In this document: one piece after another, positions 1,572 through 63,284 of the stretch
Position numbering within the stretch: the stretch's first letter is position 1
Layout of the letters: the number at the start of each line of letters is the position of its first letter
Source: Vitrella brassicaformis CCMP3155
Lineage: Eukaryota; Protista; Chromerida
Assembly (NCBI GenBank): GCA_001179505.1
Contig: CDMY01000456.1
Span: 309,129-373,128, forward strand
Direction of reading: 5' to 3'
DNA length: 64,000 bases
Made by a program: the position numbers and the translations under genes
Notes under the pieces: generated by a model
Told to the model about the DNA's origin: nothing
What the model saw: only the letters and a program-made list of their open reading frames with translations
Databases searched by the model: none

Positions 1572-4090
1572 TCACACACATGGCCCGGCGTGTTTGACTG
1601 AAAGGGCCTCACCCACCACCCCACCCGTCCCCGCCCGCACACAATTGGCGTTCCACAGATGGCATGCGTTCATGAAGGTCTGCCCGCTGGTCGCACACAC
1701 GGGCTGATGTACACCCCAACACGGCCTCGTGCACCCGTCGCCCTCCCTCTTTTCGGCGGCCCCCCGGCATTTCCGCCGTCTCTCGAGCAGGTCGATCATT
1801 CTCTGCACGTGCTGCGAGTTGGGGCTGGGTGCGAAGCACCTGATCCAGTCGACTTGGAAGGTGTTGCTGTCCTCGTTGGCTTCCCGGTGTGTGGTGGCGA
1901 TGGAGCTGAGGACGGTGTGCTGGGGGAGTGGCTGAATGCCCTCAAACAGCTGCAGCTGAGACAGCTCGGAATCCTCATGCAAGATGCCCTGGGGCAACAC
2001 ACACACACACACACACAGGGAGAGGGGAAACTGATCGCCGGTGTGGCTAGCGCACAGCCACCGTGCACACGTAGCCCACCTGTATGTGTGGATTGTCGCT
2101 CTCGCCTTCGTTGGGCACGTGAAGGTCCCCTCCTTCCTGTACCCCCACACACGCAAGCAAGCCGTCACGTGAGTGCCCCACCACTGTGTGCGCGCGCGTA
2201 CGTAGAAAGCGACGTAAAAGTCGTTGAATTCCATGGAGAACACCCTGTCCGTCATGGTCAGATTCCGAAACTTGGGTAAGTTTGTCCAGGCGATGGAATC
2301 CTTTTCTCTGAGAGGCTGGTTTCTCGTCTGTGAGCCCACGATCCTAGCCGTCTCCTCGACACACAGATCGGCTGCCGTCTGGTTGTCGTTGACGCTGGCC
2401 CTGATGGCGTCGCCGAATGCCCTCTCGATTGCTTGTGACGCGTTGGCCAGCTGATAGTCGACCACTTCTCTGGGCTTGAACATATACGCCCCTTGGTAGG
2501 TCATGAGAGTGCCATCGAGGTTGGGTGGGTGGACTGTCATCTAGAGAGGGAAACCCGACATGCATCGACAGTGACCCACAGGTACGTACGCAAAATACCT
2601 GTTCGAACATGTCCATCTCAAGATAGAAAAAATCGTCTGTCTCTAGTGCAGAATCAGATCCCGCCGGTTTTCCCCGTGTCCACACCTGGATAAAATCGGG
2701 TCCACAGAGAAACGGACATAGAAGGAGCCTTCATCTCTTTCCATTCATCCCTTCTTACGGTCTCATGGTACCCGTAATTGCCCTCAACCCTGCACAATAC
2801 CCGCACACACAACACACACACAAACAGACATCGGTCGAAATGCTCATTCGCTCTGCTCACGTGACTTTCACGGTGCAAAAGAGATTGGTCGTCGAGACCG
2901 ATTTTGCAGAAACAACGCCACCAGAGTGATAGATTGGATCGCCGGCACAATGCTGCCGCTCCCGACTCGCCATCGGGGGCGGTGGCTGAGGCCCATCCGA
3001 TGGACACACGAGCTCCGGCTCCTTGGTGGGGCAGTTGACATCGTCTGGCCAAAAGTCGCTGGTCTTGTTGCCCACAATCACGAGGTGGCCGTCGCGCACT
3101 GACACCTGCTCCGGGAGGCACTTACTCGCTCGGCACTCGCCCTCATCACGATACTGCCACTTCTGGGTGTCCAGGGCATCGCCCTCAAACTCGTCCGAGA
3201 GCTCTGCACGCACCCATCAAAAGACAAACAAGGTGAAGAGAATGAGCTCGGTCTGGTCCTTTCCTGGCATAAATAGATAGCCCTCAGGTGCTGCGTCGGT
3301 AAAGGGGTGGTCATCCAGGAAGATGGTCGCCGTCGGCTTGGGAGGGGCTCTGGCTGCGATCTCCTGCCTCTGTTCTAGCGACATGTCCGCGAGACAAGGG
3401 AATGGAATGCCTCGGGCCATGTCACTCTTAGGGCAGCATGGGACGTCGTTGGCCCCGTAGTCTGACCACTCGGCCACGGTCGATATGCAGCAGCCGGCAT
3501 CCAGATCATCAACATCAGCATCAGCATCGCAGCCTGGCCCGAGGGTGCCATCTTCGCGGCACTGGCAGGTATTTTGGCCATCGTAGTGGGTAGTGCAGCC
3601 GACGGGGCACTGACGGCCTGCATGAGAAAGAGACAGAAAGTCTGGAGTGTGTGCATCATGATGTGTGCGTGTGAGTGTTGGTGTATTGCTCACCGACAGG
3701 CTTGCAGCAGAGAGGGACCGTCAGAACTCCCCCTTCGCTCTGCTGGTCCGGCACGAACGACAGGAAGGCGCTCTCATTCCCGAGCGGAACTTCACCTGGC
3801 GGCAGCTCAGGCAAGGCGCCGCCCATCAACAGAACATCAGAAGCTGACATCCGAAGGCAGCCATCGCCGCAGTCCTCATCGTCCACCAACCGGTGCGAAG
3901 CATCGATATCGACCTGCAGGAGCAGAGGGGCTCTGCTTGGCACGAGCCGCCTGAGGTCCTCGCAGCTGTCCGCCTCTCTGATCCGCAAGTCTTTGACTGC
4001 CACGCATCCTGTGCGGTCGTGTGCGGCATGTGGCCGGCCACCAGAGGGCCACATGGACAGCCAGAAAGGGCAGAGAAGTCGCCAAAGCAT
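1572..4090 (-). CDS. Secreted glycoside hydrolase family 16 (laminarinase-like) protein with Cys-rich N-terminal region and C-terminal Kazal domain
   Basis: ATG at 4090 with hydrophobic N-terminus. GH16 hallmarks SDEFEGDALDTQKW, catalytic EMDMFE (about 2605-2625) and FQVDWIRCF. Last exon carries the Kazal pattern C-TRP-C-WGVHQPV-C-ATSGQTFMNA-C-HLWNAN-C...GPC, stop at 1572. Confidence 0.8.
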
Positions 4091-27401: not shown

Positions 27402-35841
<8,440 letters not shown>

Positions 35842-48566: not shown

Positions 48567-50764
48567 CTACCACTTGAGTGCCGACTGTGTGACGAGGCCC
48601 AGCGACTCGGCCTCGTCCTTGAGGCTCCGATAAAAGGTGTGGAACAGCCTCTCCTGCGCCTCGGCCACAAAATCCCCACCCCGCCTCTCCACGGCCGCCT
48701 TCTCCCTCAACAGCGCATACACCCGCCACGCTCCCACATTCCGCCTGGGCGGCACACATGCCGTGTCGTCACTCTGGTGCAGCAGGGCCTCCAACTCCTC
48801 CAGCCGGTGTTTCATGTCGCTCACGGCCGGGGGCTTCTTGGCTGCCGACTCTGCGTCTGCATGTGCATCGGCTGACGATGAGGGGACGGGGTGGTCTGCG
48901 AGGGTGGAGGTGATCTGGCCGCCGCCGTTGAGGCAGCCGCCCGGGCACGCCATGATCTCCACAAAATGCAGCTCACTGCTGCTGCTTGTGGCGGTGGTGG
49001 TGGTGTTGTTGGCGGCTTCTGCCTGCTGTCTGACGCGGCGGATGACGTTCTGGATGTTGCGGAAGCCGTAGGCCATCGCGAAACGAAGCTTGACGGCACC
49101 GTCGACTTCCAGCGTCACCTCCTGCCATGCCATCAGACAGCCCAACCCACTCGTCCAGTCCCTGCATTCGCGTGTGGTGTGTCCTTCACTGTCTGTCTGT
49201 CACTCATGTTTGTGCTCACCTTGATGTCTTTATTCCTCCCCGGCTTGAGCTGCAGCGGTCCCTCCACCGTCACCCCGAACAGCTCCCGCGCCGCATGCCG
49301 AAACACGGTCTCAACATAGCCCCCCGACCCCCCATTGCTGCCCACAGGCACAGACAGATGGTGCTCTTGATGCTGCTGCTGCTGCTGCTGTCCCGAGCCA
49401 GCCGACGAGGCCGTCGGCGACGTCTGCGCGTCCTCCTCGGAGCACGCTCTGTCCTCACTGGGCGGTGTCGGGCAGATGGACGTGATGATGGACGTCAGGG
49501 AGTCGACGGGCGACGGGGGGAGGGAGGGGAAGTCGACACCCAGCTCGTTGACCAGGTCGAGTATCTCCGTCGTGGCCAGCACCGTGTCCACCGAGCCAGG
49601 CGACTCACCTGTCTGGCTGGTGCTGGTGCTGCTGCCGGTGGGCGGGAGGGGTGGGGCGTCTGCTTGTGTGGCATCGACAAGGGGGTTGCCGCTGCTGGTG
49701 TGGTCGTACTTGAACTCCGGCCGGGACGCCTCCAGCTTCTTGTCGAAACACGGCATCACACTCACGTGATACACATCACCTCGAGAGGCCGGCTGGCCCT
49801 GTTGCTGTTGCTGTTGCTGCTGTTGCTGCTGCTGCTGCTGCTGTGTGAGCCTCGTTGGGGGTCGGGGGAAGGGGAGAGGGGTGGATGACCGCCACTGGCG
49901 GAGGAACTCCTGCCTGCTGTGGTGGAGGGGTATGAAGGTCTTGACGAGCTCGCCCTGGATCTGCTGGCTGGACCGCACTGTGCTGATGTGCGGCAGCACC
50001 TCCTTGTCCAGCACCTTCTCGGCGTAACAGATCCACCCGGGGCAGTGTGACGCCAACACGGGCAGCGCGGGATGCCCCTCAGCTTGGTAGCGGTCGACAA
50101 ACTCCTGCTGCGCCTCGATGAGGGTGATGGCCTCACTCACGGCCATGTCCACCACATACACGGGGCAGGGGGGCGATGGCGATGCCGATAATGGCTCGTC
50201 TTCTTGACTGGCCTTGGCTGTCGGCAGCCGAGCGAGCCGGAAGAGCGTGGCAAGTCTGCCCATGACGTCCCACGGCGACATGTGGAAGTAGGCGGCAAGT
50301 GAGGTCCTCGACTGAGGCGAGATGGAGACCACCATCATGCCGGCCGTGGCGGCCTTCCGCCTGACCTCCTCGATGCCCTGCTGCTGGATGAGCACCGCCT
50401 CTGCCGACGTGACGCAGCCGCTGCACGCGAGGCAGTCGTTGAGAGAGACCTCGGCCTTCTTCTCGGCCGTCTTCTTGATCAGGTTGGGGCGCTGCAGCTT
50501 CACCTCCATGGCCGCCTCCTTGCCTTCAGACGCATCGAGCTGCAGCTTGCCGCTCTTCTGCTGCTGCTGGTCCTTGGCCGCATCCAGGATGGGCTTGACG
50601 CACTCCTGAATACAGTCAGGAGCACAGAAAGGGACAAGACAGCACAAGCTGTGGGTGTGACGTGTCCTCGAGGCATCTGATGTGGCGTGTGTGTCTTGAT
50701 GTACCTGTGCGGGAGTGAGGAAATCATCCAGGTCGGCAAGCCGCACAGCATTCGAAAACGCCAT
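48567..50764 (-). CDS. NAR1: Cytosolic Fe-S assembly factor NAR1/NARFL (hydrogenase-like)
   Basis: [85 protein letters not shown] and terminal KW. Confidence 0.94.
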
Positions 50765-51005
50765 GATGCTCACGGGTCTTCGCTTCCTGTGTCCCCTCAA
50801 AGAGAGAGCAGTTTCACGAAACGTCCTAAAAGTGCGAGCCGAGGGAAGGAGTACGTCAGGGAAGGGAGAGAGGAAGAGGGAAGGGCTCAGACGATTCGGC
50901 CCACAGATCTGCCTATCGACGATTGATGCATCTTGCAAGCGAATGCCTTCATCTGGCGCAAGAGGCTCCCAGCTGACCGCTTCCTCACAGTAAGCCTCAC
51001 TCCTC

Positions 51006-51595
51006 ATGAGCAGACCTCCCCCCCAGGACCACCCGCCTCCCATCGACCCCGAGCGCCTGCGCACCTTCTTCGCACGAGCCTCCGTGGTGGCCCACCTGCT
51101 GCGGTCTCGGCTGGCGCTGCCCCTGCTGTACCCCCTCAACACGCAGTCGTTCGCCAACCAACCTGACAAGCACAACCCCATTGCGTCGGCGAGGTGGGAT
51201 GCCAAGACGGTGGCGCGGACGCTGAGCCACATGACGCCCGCCATCATCGGCATGTCGCGTATGGTGCATCTGCTGAAGGCTGGCCATGCGCTGGCGCACT
51301 ACAGGGGCGGGGTCAAGAGGCACATGTATGTCCTCAAGAAGAGGAAACCAGGACAACACAGGTAGGTAGGGTAATTAAAGAAACAAAGGAAGAACAGGCG
51401 GAGAGACGGGCAGGGAGGGACAGCATTTGGTGTCGTGTCATCTGTTGATCGGTGTTTGCCTTGCTGCGTGTGTGGGTGTGTGTGGTTGGTTGTATCAGGC
51501 TTCACTTTGTCCGTCCCCACGTGTGGAATTATCTGAAGCCGGGCGACGAGCATCGGACCAAGCACCTCAAGTGGAGATACGGAGAGCCGCAGTAA
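51006..51595 (+). CDS. Small basic hypothetical protein (~150 aa), 2 exons
   Basis: The 119-aa ORF splices in phase 2 to RLHFVRPHVWNYLKPGDEHRTKHLKWRYGEPQ*. Confidence 0.65.
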
Positions 51596-57343: not shown

Positions 57344-58778
57344 ATGGATTTGAGGAGCTTTGACGTCCTCCGATGGCTCATGGCGTGTCTGTGTGTGCTG
57401 CCGTGGAGGTCGCTGGCAGCGAGGATGGCCGCCTTCCAATTATCAGTGCTATCACCGAGATCTCGCTCATTCAGGGTACAAAGGCAAACAAAGATCCATG
57501 TTGGCACAGTTGGTTGACTCATTGTCGGCTTTGCTTTCCAATCTGCAGCATCAGCAGCTGCCTTGTCATCGTCGGCTGCGCTCCCTCTCCCTCTTGCACT
57601 CCACTTCTGTCGTGCAGGGCATCACACCGGGCGACGCTGAGCCTCAGGGGCCACCGGACAGCTCGACAGCGACGACGCAGCAGCCATCCCCTGATGAGGG
57701 CCAAGGGGAGGGGGAGGAGAGTGTGGTGACGGGGTTCACCATCTATGACGCCGTGCAGTCACTGCAGCAGGTGGCCGACCCGCTCTGTCAGGACAGGGAA
57801 GCGTCCATCAAGGAGACCGAGGAGGCTATCGGGGCAATAGAGCACGTCCTCAAGGAGGCCAGGGTCGGTGGGTAGGGTGAGAGAGAAAGCCAGGGAGGGG
57901 AGAAAGAGAGTATCGATGTGCTCCCGTGGTTTCGTTGTGATGATTGATGTCATTGCAGGAGAGCGCGCAAGCCCGTGAGAGGCTCGAGAAAGTAGCGGAA
58001 GATCTAAAGGCGCTCGAGAAGGCCACGACGGAGGCGCAGGCCATCGTTAACTGCAACAAAATGGAGCTGACTGTGGTCAAGCTGGTCGCCGGAGCCCTCA
58101 CCAATCTGCGGGAAATCCAAGACCGACTTGTCCCGATGGTCAACGATATCCACCAGACATATAACTTCGCTCACGACCTGTCGCAGTCGATTCGGCTGAC
58201 GATGCAGCAGCACCCGGCTTACGACGTGTCGGGGCGGGGCAGCTACCCCAGTGATAAATGGGATGAGGAGGCGCGTGTGTTCAATGAGACGGTGTTCAAT
58301 CTGTCGGACCATGTGGCGGCGAGCATGGCGACGGTGAGGGAGTGGGAACGCGACATTGCGGCGGTGCGGGGGACGATGCGTGAGACGCACGAGGCGCTGA
58401 CCATCGCATGGAGGGAGGTGATGGAGATCGGGCAGGCGTTGAAGAAAATCGGTGACCTGTTCGCCGTGCAGATCAACGACCCTGAAGACTCCGTCATACC
58501 AGGTCAGTGGCCATCGACGCAACAGGACATGCCGTCCAAATGACCCCTATTCTCGCTCTGCGTTTGTCCATATGCCTGCAGGGATGATTGACATGTACGA
58601 CGCCTTCGCGAACAGTTTTCAGGATTTGCTTGGCAGCACACGGGAGCTGGTGGAGGGAGTGGAGGGACAGGTGACGCCGGCGCGGCAAGTGCTGGAGGGG
58701 GGGAAGATAGACACGACAGTGTTGGAGTCATTTAACAGGCCGCTCAATGTCGTCATGGGGGCTGCTACAAGTGAGTGA
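57344..58778 (+). CDS. Coiled-coil/helical hypothetical protein with a putative bipartite plastid-targeting leader
   Basis: MDLRSFDVLRWLMACLCVLPWRSLAARMAAF-QLSVLSPRSRSFR splices in phase 0 to HQQLPCHRRLRSLSLL; the later exons are heptad-rich. Confidence 0.6.
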
Positions 58779-58899
58779 CAGTGATGCATGGTGTGTGAGT
58801 GTGTGTGATGGTGTTCATACTCACAGACCCACCCATGGATGAAAGATGCATCAATCCATCCATCGCCATGCAGAACAAACGTCTGGTCTGTACTGTCAA

Positions 58900-61837
58900 T
58901 CAGGTCTCTGCTGGATTAGCGAGACACTCAGGGACCGGGTAGCAATAGAGCCTTAACAACTCAAGTGGTTCGGACAGCATCGCCCGCCGCACTCGCAGCA
59001 CAGTTGACGCCGCGGGTGTGCCCTCCACCTCGCTGCGCGTGTACACATGATCACCACGACTCCCCCACGTACCCCCACCTGCAATGAATGCAAACACAGA
59101 GACAGACAGAAACATTCTCATCAGCCATGCCTTGCCCTGTCGACTTAGTTACCTGCTGTCTCGGGCCACTGTGGGTTGGTGACCGGGCAGATAAGCGGCC
59201 CCCCAGCCCACGCCCATGGTGGCGGAAGCGGCAGCAGGTCCCACAGCGCCGAGAGCTTGTCTGCAGCTGATGCCTGTGGCTCTGATGGTTGCTGCGGGAG
59301 GTTGTGCGGCACGTAGAGGAAAAAGTGGGTGCTGAAGATGGCCGTGAAGCCCCCCTCTAAGCTGACGCTCGCCTCAGACAGAATCTGCTCACACACAACA
59401 TACCAAACAGCCCATTTGGTGTCCGTCTGCGGCCCCTGCTTGTGTGGTGGCTGCGGTGTCTCACTCTGCGTGTGTATTCGAATGCCTCCATGAGCTTGCC
59501 GCCGGTGAGTCCGCCCTTGTCAGCAGACACAGACACACGGACTACTGCATGCTCATACCCCAACAATGGAACATGGGCTGCATGAAAACACACACACACA
59601 GACACGCACCCGAACCAAGAGCAGATGACCCAATCCTCAAGCGAGACACAAGCAGAGAGGGGATGCTCACTGACTCTTTCTCTCTGAGGGTCTCCTTCTC
59701 TCTGACATGACGTCCTCGAGCAACATCTGTAGGGGGAAGGTTGGAGCGCCCAAGCGCAGCTGAGGCTCGCCGGGGGGCAGTGGGAGCGGGACGATCTGAT
59801 AACAGACAGGTCGGAGACCGTTAGACAAAGACTGGTGCGCGTGGAGTCAATGCACTTGCCTGCATATGTGTGTCGATGGGGGGGCGGTGGTCCCTTTGGC
59901 TCTCACCGAACGGCACTTGTTGGATCATGCCCAGGCCCCCGATGCTCTTCAACACGTCTGCGACAGCGTCCCTGAAGGCCACACGGCGTGTCTCATCACC
60001 CAATTGTGCGGTCTTGTTCTGTTTGCGTACCAGTCGGCTGCAGAGATCTCAGCGCCTCCCCTCCTCAGCACACGATGGACAGGCACTGGGGGCGGCCTGG
60101 TCTGCGGTGTCTCCAACACGCTGTCGATGGCATCACAGACGCAAGCAAACACGTCGCTCGGGGAGCCGGTGCCGTCCACCGGGTGGTAGAGGCTCGCGAA
60201 CTCTTCCCTCACGGCCTTGTTGTGCGTGTGGAAGGCCTGAAATGCACAAACAGGAACAGGGCGTGGCTTACCCTTTTGTCTCTCGGCCTGACCTCGAGCC
60301 TGACACGGCACTTCTCTTCTGTGTCGTCGGATCGCTGTGTAAGGCGTGCTCTGAGGTCGGCGTCATCAGGGGGCGGGCTGAAGTCCAGGTGATAGATCTT
60401 GCCTGCAGGTCCGAGACAAAGGAAATGTCACAAAAGACCATGACTGGCCACATTCCAGGTACCTACCTGTCTCAGGGTCGAGCCTTCTCCCAACGACTCT
60501 TTTGACAATGTCATCATCGGGCACCTCCAGCCCCACCACACAGTCAGGGATGATGCCGTACTCACGCAACTTCTCGCCCTGCGCCTGCATGGACGAGGCA
60601 GCCTGCATGGTGATTTTCGTGTCGTATCTCTTGCTTACAGCTGTCCTAGGGAAGCCGTCAAGCAGCCACCCCCTCTCGCGACACTCAGGAGACATTAATC
60701 GATGCTTCACCAAATCTGATAATCATATGACCAAAGAAGGAAGTCGCAACGCCTGGCTGGCGCGGAAATGACATTTCGGATACCGATGATGAGGTCATCA
60801 GGGACGAGCATCCCGCCGTCCATGAACTCCTTGGCCTTGAGCCCCACCTCAGTCCCATCCTTCACCGCCGCCCGCAGCAGGTCGCCGGTCGATAAGTGGA
60901 CCACGCCGTACCGCTCGACCAACCTCTCGCACTGTGTCCCTTTGCCCGATGCAGGAGCGCCACTGATGATCAGTTTCGGCCGATCGGTGAACAGCCGGCA
61001 TATCTCATCGGCCTCATCGGGTGTCTCGTCTGTGAAGCCATATTTGATCGACTCTGCAGGGACGATTGCAGAATGGCCCCAGCGGAGAGGTTGCGGATGG
61101 CTGACGAGCATGTGGGTGGCACCGGACTCTTCTTCTGTCACCGCCTTGCCGCTGGCGGCACAGATGAAGTGGCGTGCGTCCACCAGCTGGAAGGAAGATG
61201 GGCGCGTCTTCTCGGCCGCATACTGCTCCGCCAGCAGACGAGAAGTCCACACGGCAAAAGACATCTTGGCCATGATGCAGGTCTTCTTGTCATAGTCTGA
61301 AATCGGCTGCATCAGCAATGGGGCTGTATCAGCAATGAATGGTCGCATGGGGAAATCGGGCGTGGGTGCGATGCAGGGGCGGTGTGCAGGATGGACGAGA
61401 GCCGAGTTCTCCGCCAGCCTCGCCCTGATTTTCTCCTTCAGGTTTGGCCCCTGCACCTCCAGCCTTTTTGCCTTGTCCACTAGGGTGTTCCTCTCACCCG
61501 CCACTGCGCCGCTCTCCTTCTCCACCTCTTTCTTGTACAGCTGCAGCCGCCCCCCGTACGCCACGCCATAGTCGTCCTTCAAATGCGCGAGGAACTCGTC
61601 CTTTCCGCCGATGAGATGACCCTCAGCCGTCAAGATGACCGGCCCCCTGCTGTCCCGGTACTCTGGAAGGTCGAATTTCTCCACGATGCGCTGGATGTAT
61701 TGCGGCCAGTCGGCAGCATGCTTCAAATCGACGTGGAAGTGCAGGTTGGGCAGGACGTGACCGGCCCTCTCGGCGAAGAGCTCACATATGGCCGCCTCGC
61801 GGCTGTTGGCCTGGCTGGCGATGACGTACGACGGCAT
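58900..61837 (-). CDS. MDH1B-type N-terminal domain + Ap4A phosphorylase-like (HIT) domain with an inserted adenylate kinase
   Basis: MPSYVIAS...WPQYI...GHLIGGKDEF (MDH1B N-terminus-like); LVSHPQPLRWGHSAIVP (HIT N-half); SGAPASGKGT, STGDLLR, GWLLDGFPRT, GRRLDPETG and QRSDDTEE (AK); GLGM...GESQ...DTHMQIVPLPLP, FSTHFFLYVP and WAGGPLI (HIT C-half). An in-frame upstream ATG lies at 61909. Confidence 0.8.
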
Positions 61838-61960
61838 GAGAGGTGAGATTCCGGTTGGCTCACGTGTTCTCGCCTTCGTTGCTCGGGTATCTTCTCTCGC
61901 TTTTGCCATCTGGGGGCGAGACGGGGGCTGCCACCTCCACCGAATTTACACATTGGCGAG

Positions 61961-63284
61961 ATGACATCTGCCCTGCGCAAGGCTGCCGATGCCCTGGATA
62001 AGGCCATAGCTGAAGGGAGGGACTTTCGGGCGGAGGAGAGAAACCTCTTGGCTCTGGCGAAGGCCACAGTCTTTCGGCCATCGGAGCGTGTGGATCAGGA
62101 GGATGAGACGTCGAGCCCCCCCCTGCATCATCTGACTCCTCCGCACCTCCTCGCCGCCATCGGCGCAAGCGTTGCAAGAAGTCCCCACCCGCTATCGGCG
62201 AGATGGAGGAGACCAACGACCCTGCAAAGGCCTTCCTGGCATATATCGAGGCTCGGAATGAAGGCCAGAAGGCTCTGTGGCACGGCGAGGGCCCCCCCTC
62301 CCTGAGCCCTACTAAGAAGCGCGGCCACCGAGCCACGAAAAAGGCCCAGCATGAGGCGAGGCGCGCAGAGAGGCTGCGGGCGGCAGAAGAGGCGGCACAT
62401 GCCTCGATGGATGAGGATGAATGGAGTCCTTCGTCGTCTGATGAGGCCGACTCCTCCGATGAGTCTGACTCGGCATCCCGTCCACAGCAGTCGACCTCGT
62501 CGTAAGAAGGCAGCCGCAGCCACCGGCGACCCACCCGACCCATTGCCCACCACAGCCCCGCCCCTGGCCACACATGAGGACGTCCTCCTCATATCCGACG
62601 ATTACGCCGCCCTTCGAGCGCCGATCTCCGCATCCACAGGCCGGCTCCTGGCTAGTGTGCGCGAGAAAGACGACCAGCGGTGTGGGCAGCGCACCTTTGA
62701 GGCGGCGAAGGAGAGGTGGCCGGCGAAGTTCCAACCAGTGGTGGACTACTGGGACAAGAAGCTGGAGGAGCTGCCGAAAGAGATCCGCCCCGTTCTCATC
62801 CCGCCTCTCCTCCCGCGCCTGGTCACAAAGGGCGGCAAGAAGTCGCTGCGGCTGCACCAGGGGCTGGGTGTGGCTGAGGGTGCCGTCAAGGGGGACGCCA
62901 ATTGGGATCCGCAGTCGCTTCCCTGGCACCCGGAGGGCCATCCCACGTATTTGTGCAGACGGCCAGACGGCAAGTTCACTACAATGACCCTACGGTGAGG
63001 GCTTCGGGAAGGGTGAAAAGAAGATATGTACATGTGTGTGTAATGTGCGTGTGTCTGTGTGTGGTGGATGTGTGTGTGTGCACAGGTTTCTGACATACGT
63101 CATGCTTCGGTTGCCGCCCGATGACCCCTTCCCCTTTCATTTCCTCGATTTCGTCATTGCCGCGCCAGACATGACAGACCCGCGCTGCATCGCTTCTGTC
63201 AGGGAGAAGCTCAAGGCCGTCTGCGGGGAGGATGAGCTCATAGCCGTTCTGGAGAAGAGACCGATGGACCAATGGCGAAAACTG
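61961..63284 (+). CDS. Hypothetical nuclear protein, N-terminal part; middle segment is out of frame (intron or compensating frameshifts); probably continues into the Myb exons
   Basis: ORFs 61961-62305 and 62351-62998 share a frame, while a protein-like segment 62107-62505 lies in another frame. The exon ending at 63284 is followed by a GT donor. Confidence 0.45.

What the first reader, a model, noticed from the sequence alone, without database searches (positions are those of the whole stretch)
58900..61837. Adenylate kinase inserted inside an Ap4A-phosphorylase (HIT) fold, behind an MDH1B-type N-terminal domain
Seen: one uninterrupted exon (61837-60784) encodes an MDH1B-N-like segment, then LVSHPQPLRWGHSAIVP, then the start of a short-LID adenylate kinase of the plastid/cyanobacterial type. 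After the AK ends, the exons resume with VADVLKSIGGLGM..GESQ..DTHMQIVPLPLP, FPLQMLLE, LLGYEHAV, FSTHFFLYVP, WAGGPLI and EPLELLRL. Known: this order of motifs matches Ap4A phosphorylase/ATP adenylyltransferase (Apa1/Apa2 type; GASQxHxHxQ, YNLLxTxxW, GFAG). Ap4A phosphorolysis yields ATP + ADP, and AK converts ADP. Inference: this is a domain-insertion enzyme coupling dinucleoside polyphosphate turnover to adenylate recycling, possibly in the flagellum. The HIT motif is altered (HxHxQ to DxHxQ; nucleophilic His retained), so the domain may have changed specificity or act as an AMP/ADP sensor.
Basis: partly seen in the sequence, partly recalled or inferred. Interest (0 to 1): 0.85.

Follow-up and report, generated by a model that had tools for sequence, protein, structure and literature searches.

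The report
Adenylate kinase embedded in HIT enzyme
A ten-exon alveolate gene, confirmed by spliced RNA, encodes one 773-residue protein with a docking-type domain like that of the ciliary protein MDH1B, followed by an Ap4A-phosphorylase-like enzyme fold that has a complete adenylate kinase inserted into one of its loops; this layout is not described in the papers I could search.

Summary
Spliced RNA contigs from two runs give a ten-exon gene on the minus strand (61837-58900) encoding 773 aa. Both junctions between the adenylate kinase (AK) and its host fold lie inside exons.

- **AK:** residues about 288-500 are a Pfam adenylate kinase with all catalytic residues present.
- **Host family:** the flanks (1-262 and 517-773) match a roughly 500-aa family without AK, largely from dinoflagellate transcriptomes. 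The AK sits in that family's variable loop.
- **Fold:** an AlphaFold model of a family member (pLDDT 92) matches yeast Ap4A phosphorylase Apa2 over the whole enzyme (Z 21.4). Its first 126 residues match the N-terminal domain of MDH1B (Z 17.9), which docks MDH1B on ciliary radial spoke 3.
- **HIT motif:** the change from H-x-H-x-Q to D-T-H-x-Q holds across the family (D/E in 60 of 61). The nucleophile His is kept in 53 of 61, including here.
- **Other lineages:** a 2800-aa relative has several AK modules at what appears to be the same site. A Besnoitia relative has an unresolved insert there.

Coupling of Ap4A breakdown to ADP recycling, and a flagellar location, remain plausible but untested. 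I rate it a new variant of known kinds, of moderate to high interest.

The parts
60784..61837 (-). Coding exon 1 (aa 1-351): N-terminal domain, first part of the HIT fold and the start of the adenylate kinase (AK), in one open frame
   Evidence: RNA contigs cover it without a break (X7 record 11, X1 records 4-6)
60639..60715 (-). Exon 2 (AK, DGFPRT motif)
   Evidence: Joint 60784|60715 seen in X1 and X7; Pfam ADK
60467..60584 (-). Exon 3 (AK, GRR motif)
   Evidence: Joint 60639|60584 seen in X1 and X7
60293..60402 (-). Exon 4 (AK lid, RSDD and RVRL motifs)
   Evidence: Joint seen in X7; best solved match is maize AK 1ZAK, E 3e-8
60031..60236 (-). Exon 5: C-terminal helix of the AK, a linker, and the return into the HIT fold (PVPVHRVL, ISAAD)
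   Evidence: joints on both sides
59860..59971 (-). Exon 6: HIT helix and the D-T-H-M-Q motif (59874-59860), followed by a GC-AG intron
   Evidence: Joints 60031|59971 and 59860|59795 seen in X1 and X7; motif
59675..59795 (-). Exon 7 (HIT fold)
   Evidence: joints
59465..59577 (-). Exon 8 (HIT fold)
   Evidence: joints
59153..59384 (-). Exon 9 (HIT2 / auxiliary part: FSTHFF, GGPLICP, WPETAG)
   Evidence: joints
58900..59078 (-). Exon 10, ending in stop TGA 58902-58900
   Evidence: joint 59153|59078
61463..61837 (-). Domain: MDH1B-type N-terminal thioredoxin-like domain plus helix (aa 1-125)
   Evidence: E 5e-4 to MDH1B 9fqr_Xq; profile E 3e-15; Z 17.9 on the relative's model
61052..61390 (-). 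Domain: first part of the Apa2-like HIT fold (aa about 150-262), with the family-invariant H242, H247-P-x-P250 and H255
60048..61051 (-). Inserted segment (aa 263-516, introns included): linker, AK (aa about 288-500), linker
   Evidence: Relatives have about 29 residues here where this protein has 254; Pfam ADK
58903..60047 (-). Domain: remainder of the Apa2-like HIT fold (aa 517-773, introns included)
   Evidence: phmmer to relatives, for example aa 505-763 against P0006 300-537, E 1.8e-20; family profile matches aa 1-763, E 2e-69

Best explanation
**Shown.** One mRNA encodes one 773-aa protein built of three modules.

1. Residues 1-125 are a thioredoxin-like domain plus helix, homologous to the N-terminal domain of MDH1B.
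2. Residues about 150-262 and 517-773 together form a HIT-superfamily fold of the Ap4A phosphorylase / ATP adenylyltransferase (Apa2) type. They belong to an unnamed family of about 500 aa found largely in dinoflagellate transcriptomes.
3. A complete long-type adenylate kinase (AK) is inserted, with linkers, at the tip of a beta-hairpin. That hairpin follows the conserved H-x-x-x-V-P strand of the first HIT subdomain.

**Inferred.**

- The AK is active (2 ADP <-> ATP + AMP), because every catalytic residue is in place. I put this at about 0.8.
- The HIT part is a nucleotidyl-transfer enzyme using His557 as nucleophile, with Asp555 taking over the role of the first histidine. I put this at about 0.55.
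- Its substrate is an adenine dinucleotide or an ADP-yielding compound such as Ap4A (Ap4A + Pi -> ATP + ADP). The embedded AK would then rebalance the ADP on the same polypeptide, and the HIT part would remove ApnA compounds, which are potent bisubstrate inhibitors of AK (general knowledge). I put this at about 0.3.
- The N-terminal domain docks the protein on an axonemal structure such as radial spoke 3, as it does for MDH1B. I put this at about 0.45.
For: **Gene model.** Spliced contigs in two runs show all joints, and the reading frame is open for 773 codons.

**AK.** Pfam ADK gives E 1e-22, and solved AKs match at E 3e-21. Alignment of the lid exon to E. coli AK places R156, D158, D159 and R167. 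The P-loop Lys and the equivalents of R36, R88 and R123/124 can be read in the sequence.

**Insertion.** About 60 natural relatives lack the AK and align on both sides of it.

**Fold.** The model of relative P0002 (pLDDT 91.8) matches Apa2 at Z 21.4, 259 residues, rmsd 3.2 and at Foldseek E 4.6e-11. Atlas matches are ATP adenylyltransferase clusters. Pfam Ap4A_phos_N matches 33 of 61 relatives and ATP_transf matches 5 of 61. The family profile hits Apa2 by sequence at E 0.007-0.009, colinear over the domain.

**Conservation.** In the motif, D/E is found in 60 of 61, His in 53 of 61 and Gln in 50 of 61. The window protein keeps these, and 62 of 114 strongly conserved positions overall.

**N-terminal domain.** In mouse radial spoke 3 (RS3) this domain binds CFAP91, C10ORF53 and AK9, and RS3 carries five AK domains (bioRxiv 10.1101/2025.05.19.654877). 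A 93-kDa Tetrahymena protein similar to MDH1B only at its N-terminus falls in the CFAP91 knockout (PMC12399478).
Against: - The fold was modelled on a relative that lacks the AK (about 30% identical), not on the window protein. The spliced protein could not be handed to the folding tool by reference.
- The canonical first histidine of the HIT motif is missing.
- The residue aligned with Apa2 Ser156 is not conserved, and Apa2 Asn92 is replaced by an invariant His. The substrate may therefore differ, or catalysis may be lost. Eight of 61 relatives lack the nucleophile His.
- Exon-sized pieces of the window's HIT part give no Pfam hit on their own.
- There is no localisation or activity data for any family member.
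- The Tetrahymena protein was not shown to belong to this family.
Confidence: 0.7

Rival explanations
1. Only the adenylate kinase (AK) is an enzyme. The Apa2-like fold has lost catalysis and serves as a scaffold or as a nucleotide-binding sensor that positions or regulates the AK, in the way metabolic enzymes act as struts in radial spoke 3.
For: The first HIT histidine is replaced in 60 of 61 relatives, and the nucleophile is lost in 8 of 61. Apa2 substrate residues (Ser156, Asn92) are not kept. In mouse radial spoke 3, the MDH1/MDH1B pair and the AKs have structural roles.
Against: Thr is kept in 58, His in 53, Gln in 50 and the upstream Arg in 58 of 61, and two histidines of the first strand region are near-invariant (59-60 of 61). 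This pattern suggests selection on an active site. An Asp can hold the nucleophile His as the first His does in Apa2 (inference).
Confidence: 0.3
2. The HIT part is active but works on another nucleotide, for example a nucleoside-diphosphate sugar, adenylyl sulfate or ADP itself, as do the related GDP-hexose and ADP-glucose phosphorylases. The AK would then serve a different pathway.
For: Structural matches also include DUF4922 / GDPGP1_C clusters. The sequence match to Apa2 is weak, at E about 0.007, and the substrate-contact residues differ.
Against: Apa2 and ATP adenylyltransferase clusters are the best matches by every method. No relative hits a GDPGP1 Pfam model. An adenine-nucleotide product fits the embedded AK.
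Confidence: 0.25
3. The architecture is an artefact: two adjacent genes, a read-through transcript or a mis-assembly.
For: The RNA evidence consists of assembled contigs, not single long reads. Some X7 contigs run on into unrelated sequence at 60945 and 59093.
Against: Both junctions lie inside single exons. The same joints appear in two runs (X1 and X7) filed under different studies and organism labels. DNA runs hold the whole stretch. A 2800-aa relative from an intron-free reading frame has the same N-terminal junction and probably the C-terminal half of the fold.
Confidence: 0.02

Closest known systems
Yeast Ap4A phosphorylase Apa2 (PDB 4I5T/V/W; Pfam PF19327 + PF09830, ATP adenylyltransferase family)
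   Same: Whole-domain fold: HIT1, HIT2 and auxiliary parts, Z 21.4 over 259 residues. The order of sequence motifs is colinear, and the nucleophile His and the Gln of the motif are retained.
   Different: Identity is about 15%. The first motif His is Asp/Glu, Asn92 is replaced by His, and the Ser156 position is not kept. An extra N-terminal domain is present. Here, a 254-residue segment holding an adenylate kinase is inserted after the strand that corresponds to Apa2 'EHSLLVT'.
MDH1B (PDB 9D2F chain F, 9FQR chain Xq), N-terminal domain
   Same: Thioredoxin-like domain plus connecting helix starting at residue 1. The match is 28% identical with rmsd 1.6 over 119 residues on the relative's model, and is also detectable directly from the window sequence.
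   Different: It is followed by a HIT fold instead of a malate dehydrogenase domain. Its location on radial spoke 3 is known only for the mammalian protein.
Long-type adenylate kinases with a shortened lid (maize plastid AK 1ZAK; second AK domain of axonemal AK8)
   Same: P-loop, NMP-binding and lid motifs with all catalytic residues. The lid length and sequence are nearly those of 1ZAK.
   Different: It is not a free-standing enzyme or an end-to-end fusion. It is inserted inside another enzyme's fold.
Multi-domain axonemal adenylate kinases (AK7, AK8, AK9, CPC1)
   Same: AK domains joined to docking modules of the axoneme. The 2800-aa relative P0021 has five or six AK modules, as AK9/CPC1-type proteins do.
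   Different: Those are linear fusions with DPY-30 or other modules. None is reported inside a HIT fold in the papers I could search.

Membership tests
Adenylate kinase (Pfam PF00406) | Match above the curated Pfam score | tested here: met
   Exon 1 alone scores 81.3 bits against a cut-off of 26.8. Exons 2 and 3 continue the profile.
Adenylate kinase (Pfam PF00406) | P-loop GxxxxGKGT and the catalytic Arg/Asp set (E. coli K13, R36, R88, R123, R156, D158, D159, R167) | tested here: met
   GAPASGKGT, GDLLR, DGFPRT, GRR, QRSDD and RVRL are all present. The lid exon is aligned to 1AKE residues 131-168. The other equivalences were read from motifs.
Adenylate kinase (Pfam PF00406) | Phosphotransfer activity | not testable with these tools
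   Needs an enzyme assay.
Ap4A phosphorylase / ATP adenylyltransferase (Apa1/Apa2; PF19327 + PF09830) | Apa2-type fold over the whole domain | tested here: met
   On relative P0002: Z 21.4, 259 residues aligned; Foldseek E 4.6e-11; Atlas TM 0.81 by the matched cluster. The window protein joins this family at E 2e-69 but was not folded itself.
Ap4A phosphorylase / ATP adenylyltransferase (Apa1/Apa2; PF19327 + PF09830) | Pfam match above the curated score | tested here: inconclusive
   33 of 61 relatives match PF19327 at E <= 0.05. P0055 passes the cut-off (24.5 against 23.1). The window's exon pieces give no hit, and the spliced protein was not scanned whole.
Ap4A phosphorylase / ATP adenylyltransferase (Apa1/Apa2; PF19327 + PF09830) | HIT motif H-x-H-x-Q | tested here: not met
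   The motif is D-T-H-M-Q at aa 555-559. The first position is D/E in 60 of 61 relatives. The second His and the Gln are kept.
Ap4A phosphorylase / ATP adenylyltransferase (Apa1/Apa2; PF19327 + PF09830) | Substrate-contact residues of Apa2 (Asn92, Ser156) | tested here: not met
   In the profile alignments Asn92 aligns with the family's near-invariant His (59 of 61), and Ser156 with a variable His/Asp, which is Pro here. These are weak alignments, so the result is provisional.
Ap4A phosphorylase / ATP adenylyltransferase (Apa1/Apa2; PF19327 + PF09830) | Pi-dependent cleavage of Ap4A | not testable with these tools
   Needs an enzyme assay.
MDH1B | N-terminal globular domain plus helix | tested here: met
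MDH1B | Malate dehydrogenase catalytic domain | tested here: not met
   No Ldh Pfam match in the window protein or its relatives. A HIT fold follows instead.
GDP-hexose phosphorylase (GDPGP1 / VTC2) | Best sequence and fold match | tested here: not met
   No relative hits a GDPGP1 model. DUF4922 / GDPGP1_C clusters rank below the ATP adenylyltransferase clusters.

The most novel reading that the evidence does not exclude
The MDH1B-type N-terminal domain is a portable docking module for radial spoke 3. Where animals dock a malate dehydrogenase with it, myzozoan alveolates dock an Ap4A-phosphorylase-like HIT enzyme. In the chromerid/apicomplexan branch that enzyme took up one adenylate kinase (or, in one lineage, five or six) inside its own fold. 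The result would be a single axonemal machine that clears adenine dinucleotides and regenerates ATP next to the dyneins.
Probability: 0.2. Interest if true: 0.8.

Novelty: new variant of a known kind. Interest (0 to 1): 0.62.

Why it matters
- **Protein evolution.** Insertion of one complete enzyme inside the fold of another is rare and useful for studying how proteins evolve. Here natural versions without the insert, with one adenylate kinase and with several exist side by side.
- **An unnamed family.** The host family (MDH1B-type N-terminal domain plus an Apa2-like fold with a D-x-H-x-Q motif) has no name and no curated Pfam model of its own. I found no paper on it.
- **A testable link to cilia.** The family shares a domain with a known component of radial spoke 3, which in mammals is a hub of adenylate kinases. 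This gives a concrete hypothesis about nucleotide, and possibly Ap4A, metabolism in alveolate flagella, including the microgametes of coccidian parasites.

Tried and rejected
- **Alternative family.** I first suspected a GDP-hexose phosphorylase (VTC2/GDPGP1) rather than Apa. I rejected this because all sequence and fold matches favour Apa2 / ATP adenylyltransferase.
- **Alternative splice sites.** An alternative acceptor for exon 3 (60602) and an alternative donor for exon 7 (59671) were rejected by the RNA joints.
- **Searches for more relatives carrying an adenylate kinase (AK).**
  - An exhaustive search with aa 1-285 gave 29 hits. Only two of these have a long segment at the AK site, P0021 and P0028.
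  - Word-index searches with Besnoitia P0028 and with a mixed alignment returned only P0028 itself.
  - A metagenome scan found nothing.
  - The ESM Atlas feature search found nothing.
- **The window's own protein.** It was absent from both protein collections.
- **The Besnoitia insert.** It shows no sequence similarity to AK and folds with pLDDT below 50, so whether it is a decayed AK is undecided.
- **Failed query.** An alignment of exon pieces to P0028 (A3) was too poor to use as a query.
- **Loose contig ends.** Those at 61910, 61863, 60945 and 59093 match nothing in the window. I take them for contigs of other loci that share short words, but this is unproven.
- **Earlier findings.** The look-up returned nothing for this place.
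Full report
**1. What is in the sequence**

On the minus strand, 61837-60784 is one open frame of 351 codons. It contains:
- an N-terminal segment;
- the stretch THMLVSHPQPLRWGHSAIVP (aa 241-260);
- about 30 further residues on, the adenylate kinase (AK) P-loop GAPASGKGT (aa 293-301).

Pfam ADK matches aa 291-351 at E 1e-22 and continues into the next two exons. Solved AKs match at E 3e-21. The window is GC-rich (about 59%) and intron-bearing, so it is eukaryotic.

**2. Gene model and RNA**

I laid assembled contigs of four public runs on 58600-62200. Run X7 has a 2312-nt contig covering 61831-58904 in which nine segments are skipped. Run X1, filed under another study and organism label, shows eight of the same joints at 100% identity.

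The exons are 61837-60784, 60715-60639, 60584-60467, 60402-60293, 60236-60031, 59971-59860, 59795-59675, 59577-59465, 59384-59153 and 59078-58900. Eight introns are GT-AG and one (59859-59796) is GC-AG. The joined frame is open for 773 codons and ends at TGA 58902-58900.

- The in-frame stop at 59949 lies in the removed intron.
- The AK's C-terminal helix and the first returning elements of the host fold (PVPVHRVL, ISAAD) are in the same exon 5. The entry into the AK is inside exon 1. The chimeric order therefore does not depend on any splice.

All relatives, and MDH1B itself, begin at the position of the ATG at 61837. However, an in-frame ATG at 61909 lies in the transcribed leader (X1 contig to 61911), so 24 extra residues cannot be excluded.

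**3. The flanks belong to a family that normally has no AK**

An exhaustive search of 1.84 billion representative proteins with aa 1-285 gave 29 hits, the best at 29% identity. I compared the whole spliced protein with these hits. The proteins of about 500 aa match three blocks: aa 1-90/150, aa about 170-265 and aa about 505-763. For example, P0006 matches 1-87, 139-229 and 300-537.

A profile search then found 62 members. Most come from transcript-sized contigs of about 1.6-1.9 kb. Named sources are dinoflagellates: Pelagodinium, Tripos fusus and a Symbiodinium gene model.

The family profile aligns to the window protein as one hit, aa 1-763, E 2e-69. Between two conserved anchor positions the relative P0002 has 29 residues, where the window protein has 254. 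That loop is variable and acidic in the relatives. The AK is therefore an insertion into a pre-existing protein, not a fusion at an end.

**4. What the host is**

By sequence:
- The family profile hits MDH1B at E 3e-15 (residues 1-124).
- The only other solved family it hits is yeast Ap4A phosphorylase Apa2, at E 0.007-0.009, colinear from the first strand to the 'TKKWICVVP' strand.
- Pfam Ap4A_phos_N matches 33 of 61 members at E <= 0.05 (best 4.6e-7; P0055 passes the curated cut-off). ATP_transf matches 5 of 61.

By structure:
- AlphaFold on P0002 with 61 aligned sequences gave pLDDT 91.8 and pTM 0.84.
- Foldseek ranks Apa2 first (E 4.6e-11), then MDH1B from bovine sperm and from mouse radial spoke 3.
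- VIA-align gives Apa2 Z 21.4 (259 residues, rmsd 3.2; model 127-501 against Apa2 4-316) and MDH1B Z 17.9 (119 residues, rmsd 1.6, 28% identity).
- In the ESM Atlas the best shape matches for residues 127-498 are ATP adenylyltransferase clusters (PF19327 + PF09830). DUF4922 / GDPGP1_C clusters rank lower.

The window's own first 150 residues hit MDH1B directly at E 5e-4.

In the model, the loop that receives the AK is the turn of a beta-hairpin (P0002 strands 229-232 and 238-243). This hairpin follows the H-L-V-L-V-P strand and precedes the helix that begins D-F-x-A-A. The two ends of an inserted domain can sit close together at such a turn.

**5. State of the two active sites**

*AK.* The following are present:
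- the P-loop Lys;
- GDLLR (E. coli R36);
- DGFPRT (R88);
- GRR (R123/124);
- QRSDD (R156, D158, D159);
- RVRL (R167).

The lid exon is aligned to E. coli AK 131-168. The other equivalences were read from motifs. The lid exon's best solved match is maize plastid AK 1ZAK (E 3e-8), and the next is the second domain of axonemal AK8. It is a long-type AK with a slightly shortened lid and no zinc cysteines. I infer it is active.

*HIT part.* Apa2 uses H159-x-H161-x-Q163, with H161 as nucleophile, H159 hydrogen-bonded to it, and Q163 on the leaving phosphate (bioRxiv 10.64898/2026.09.13.751320).

| Motif position in the family | Count out of 61 |
|---|---|
| First position D/E | 60 |
| Thr | 58 |
| Nucleophile His | 53 (7 Tyr, 1 Phe) |
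| Gln | 50 |

- The window protein has D555-T-H557-M-Q559.
- Two histidines near the first strand are near-invariant (59-60 of 61; H242 and H247 here). The second aligns with Apa2 Asn92, a substrate contact.
- The position of Apa2 Ser156 is variable, and is Pro here.
- The window protein keeps 62 of 114 positions that are at least 85% conserved.

This points to a conserved pocket with altered chemistry. I favour an active nucleotidyl-transferase or phosphorylase with an Asp-His pair (about 0.55) over a dead scaffold (about 0.3). The substrate is not known.

**6. Other lineages with something at the same site**

*P0021* (2800 aa) comes from an intron-free reading frame on a 17-kb contig of run SRR22729506.
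- The family profile matches its first 334 residues at 103 bits, up to the V-V-P strand.
- An AK-like P-loop follows about 30 residues later, as in the window protein.
- Five or six AK modules follow.
- Near its end it has D-S-H-I-N-V-I-P-L-P and later family motifs. A targeted test of the C-terminal half gives only 8.5 bits, E 6.5e-5 for one sequence, so the return into the fold is probable, not proven.

*Besnoitia besnoiti XP_029222630* (P0028, 767 aa) matches the family over its whole length (E 3.5e-113). It has about 200 extra residues at the same site. These show no AK similarity and fold poorly (pLDDT below 50).

In a tree of the host columns, the window protein pairs with Besnoitia (SH-aLRT 91, both on long branches). 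The two, with P0021, lie outside the clade of 59 other rows, largely dinoflagellate-type sequences (support 94). One origin of the insertion is allowed but not shown.

No closer relative was found in metagenomes or by word-index searches.

**7. How it most likely works**

*Shown:* the modules, their order, the insertion point, and the intact AK motifs.

*Established elsewhere:*
- Apa-type enzymes cleave Ap4A with phosphate into ATP + ADP through a His-AMP intermediate.
- AK interconverts 2 ADP with ATP + AMP.
- ApnA compounds are bisubstrate ligands of AK; E. coli AK binds and slowly cleaves Ap4A (PMC10399197, abstract seen).
- In mouse radial spoke 3, the MDH1B N-terminal domain binds CFAP91, C10ORF53 and AK9. 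That spoke carries five AK domains thought to regenerate ATP locally (bioRxiv 10.1101/2025.05.19.654877).
- In Tetrahymena, a 93-kDa uncharacterised protein resembling MDH1B only at its N-terminus falls in the CFAP91 knockout (PMC12399478).

*Inferred:* the protein is docked by its N-terminal domain, possibly on the axoneme. Its HIT part turns over an adenine nucleotide conjugate, and the embedded AK equilibrates the ADP formed. None of this was tested. I did not show that the Tetrahymena protein belongs to this family.

**8. Comparison and novelty**

- Each module is of a known kind. The combination is not described in the papers I could search.
- The host family has no curated model of its own.
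- It fails the strict Apa membership test on the H-x-H-x-Q motif and on two substrate contacts. I therefore file it as Apa2-like in fold, not as an Apa orthologue.

I rate it a new variant of known kinds.

**9. Limits**

- The RNA evidence is from assembled contigs.
The closest named relative and the neighbouring genes suggest an alveolate near the apicomplexans.
- The fold evidence comes from a relative about 30% identical.

Noticed in passing
window 58743-59594 (+ strand): A contig of run X8 (and a joint in X7) shows a plus-strand GT..AG splice from 58770 to 58904. It then runs unspliced to 59594, antisense over the last three exons of the gene. It is probably the 3' end of the convergent neighbour, whose coiled-coil ORF is at 57944-58543.
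   Followed up: partly
window 61863-61911: An in-frame ATG at 61909 lies 24 codons upstream of the homology-supported start, inside the transcribed leader. A 46-nt piece (61863-61908) also occurs in contigs of X7 and X8 whose flanks match nothing in the 64-kb window, so a similar short sequence probably exists at another locus.
   Followed up: partly
window 60945 and 59093: Two X7 contigs match the gene up to these points and then continue for 255 letters of sequence absent from the window. The first break is in the conserved P-loop coding region, so these may be assembly chimeras with paralogous kinases.
   Followed up: partly
window 49136-51253 (-), 27490-28398 (-), 33958-34980 (-), 1575-2540 (-): Long ORFs hit the iron-only hydrogenase large subunit (E 9e-32). 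There are weak hits to pyruvate:ferredoxin oxidoreductase and to an NAD-binding oxidoreductase domain, which may be pieces of a pyruvate:NADP oxidoreductase, and a Kazal inhibitor domain.
   Followed up: no
L001:438-8840 (protein P0021): A 2800-aa intron-free ORF from run SRR22729506 has the MDH1B-type domain, the first half of the HIT fold, five or six adenylate kinase modules (some with degenerate P-loops) and probably the second half of the HIT fold at its end. The organism is unknown. Its composition is rich in Asn and Ser.
   Followed up: partly
model of P0002 residues 1-122: Besides MDH1B, the N-terminal domain matches unnamed axonemal chains 8j07_S (human; Z 15.5 by VIA-align), 9fqr_HZ (bovine; Foldseek E 0.023) and 9e5c_3h (Trypanosoma brucei; Foldseek E 0.062). 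The Z of 15.5 is well above that for ordinary glutaredoxins (about 9). I did not identify these chains. An oomycete cluster of 122-aa fragments matches at TM 0.95.
   Followed up: no
protein P0015 (Ichthyophthirius XP_004032465, 158 aa): A ciliate protein consisting of the N-terminal domain only. It may be a fragment of the orthologue of Tetrahymena TTHERM_00770670 (93 kDa), which is reduced in the CFAP91 knockout.
   Followed up: no
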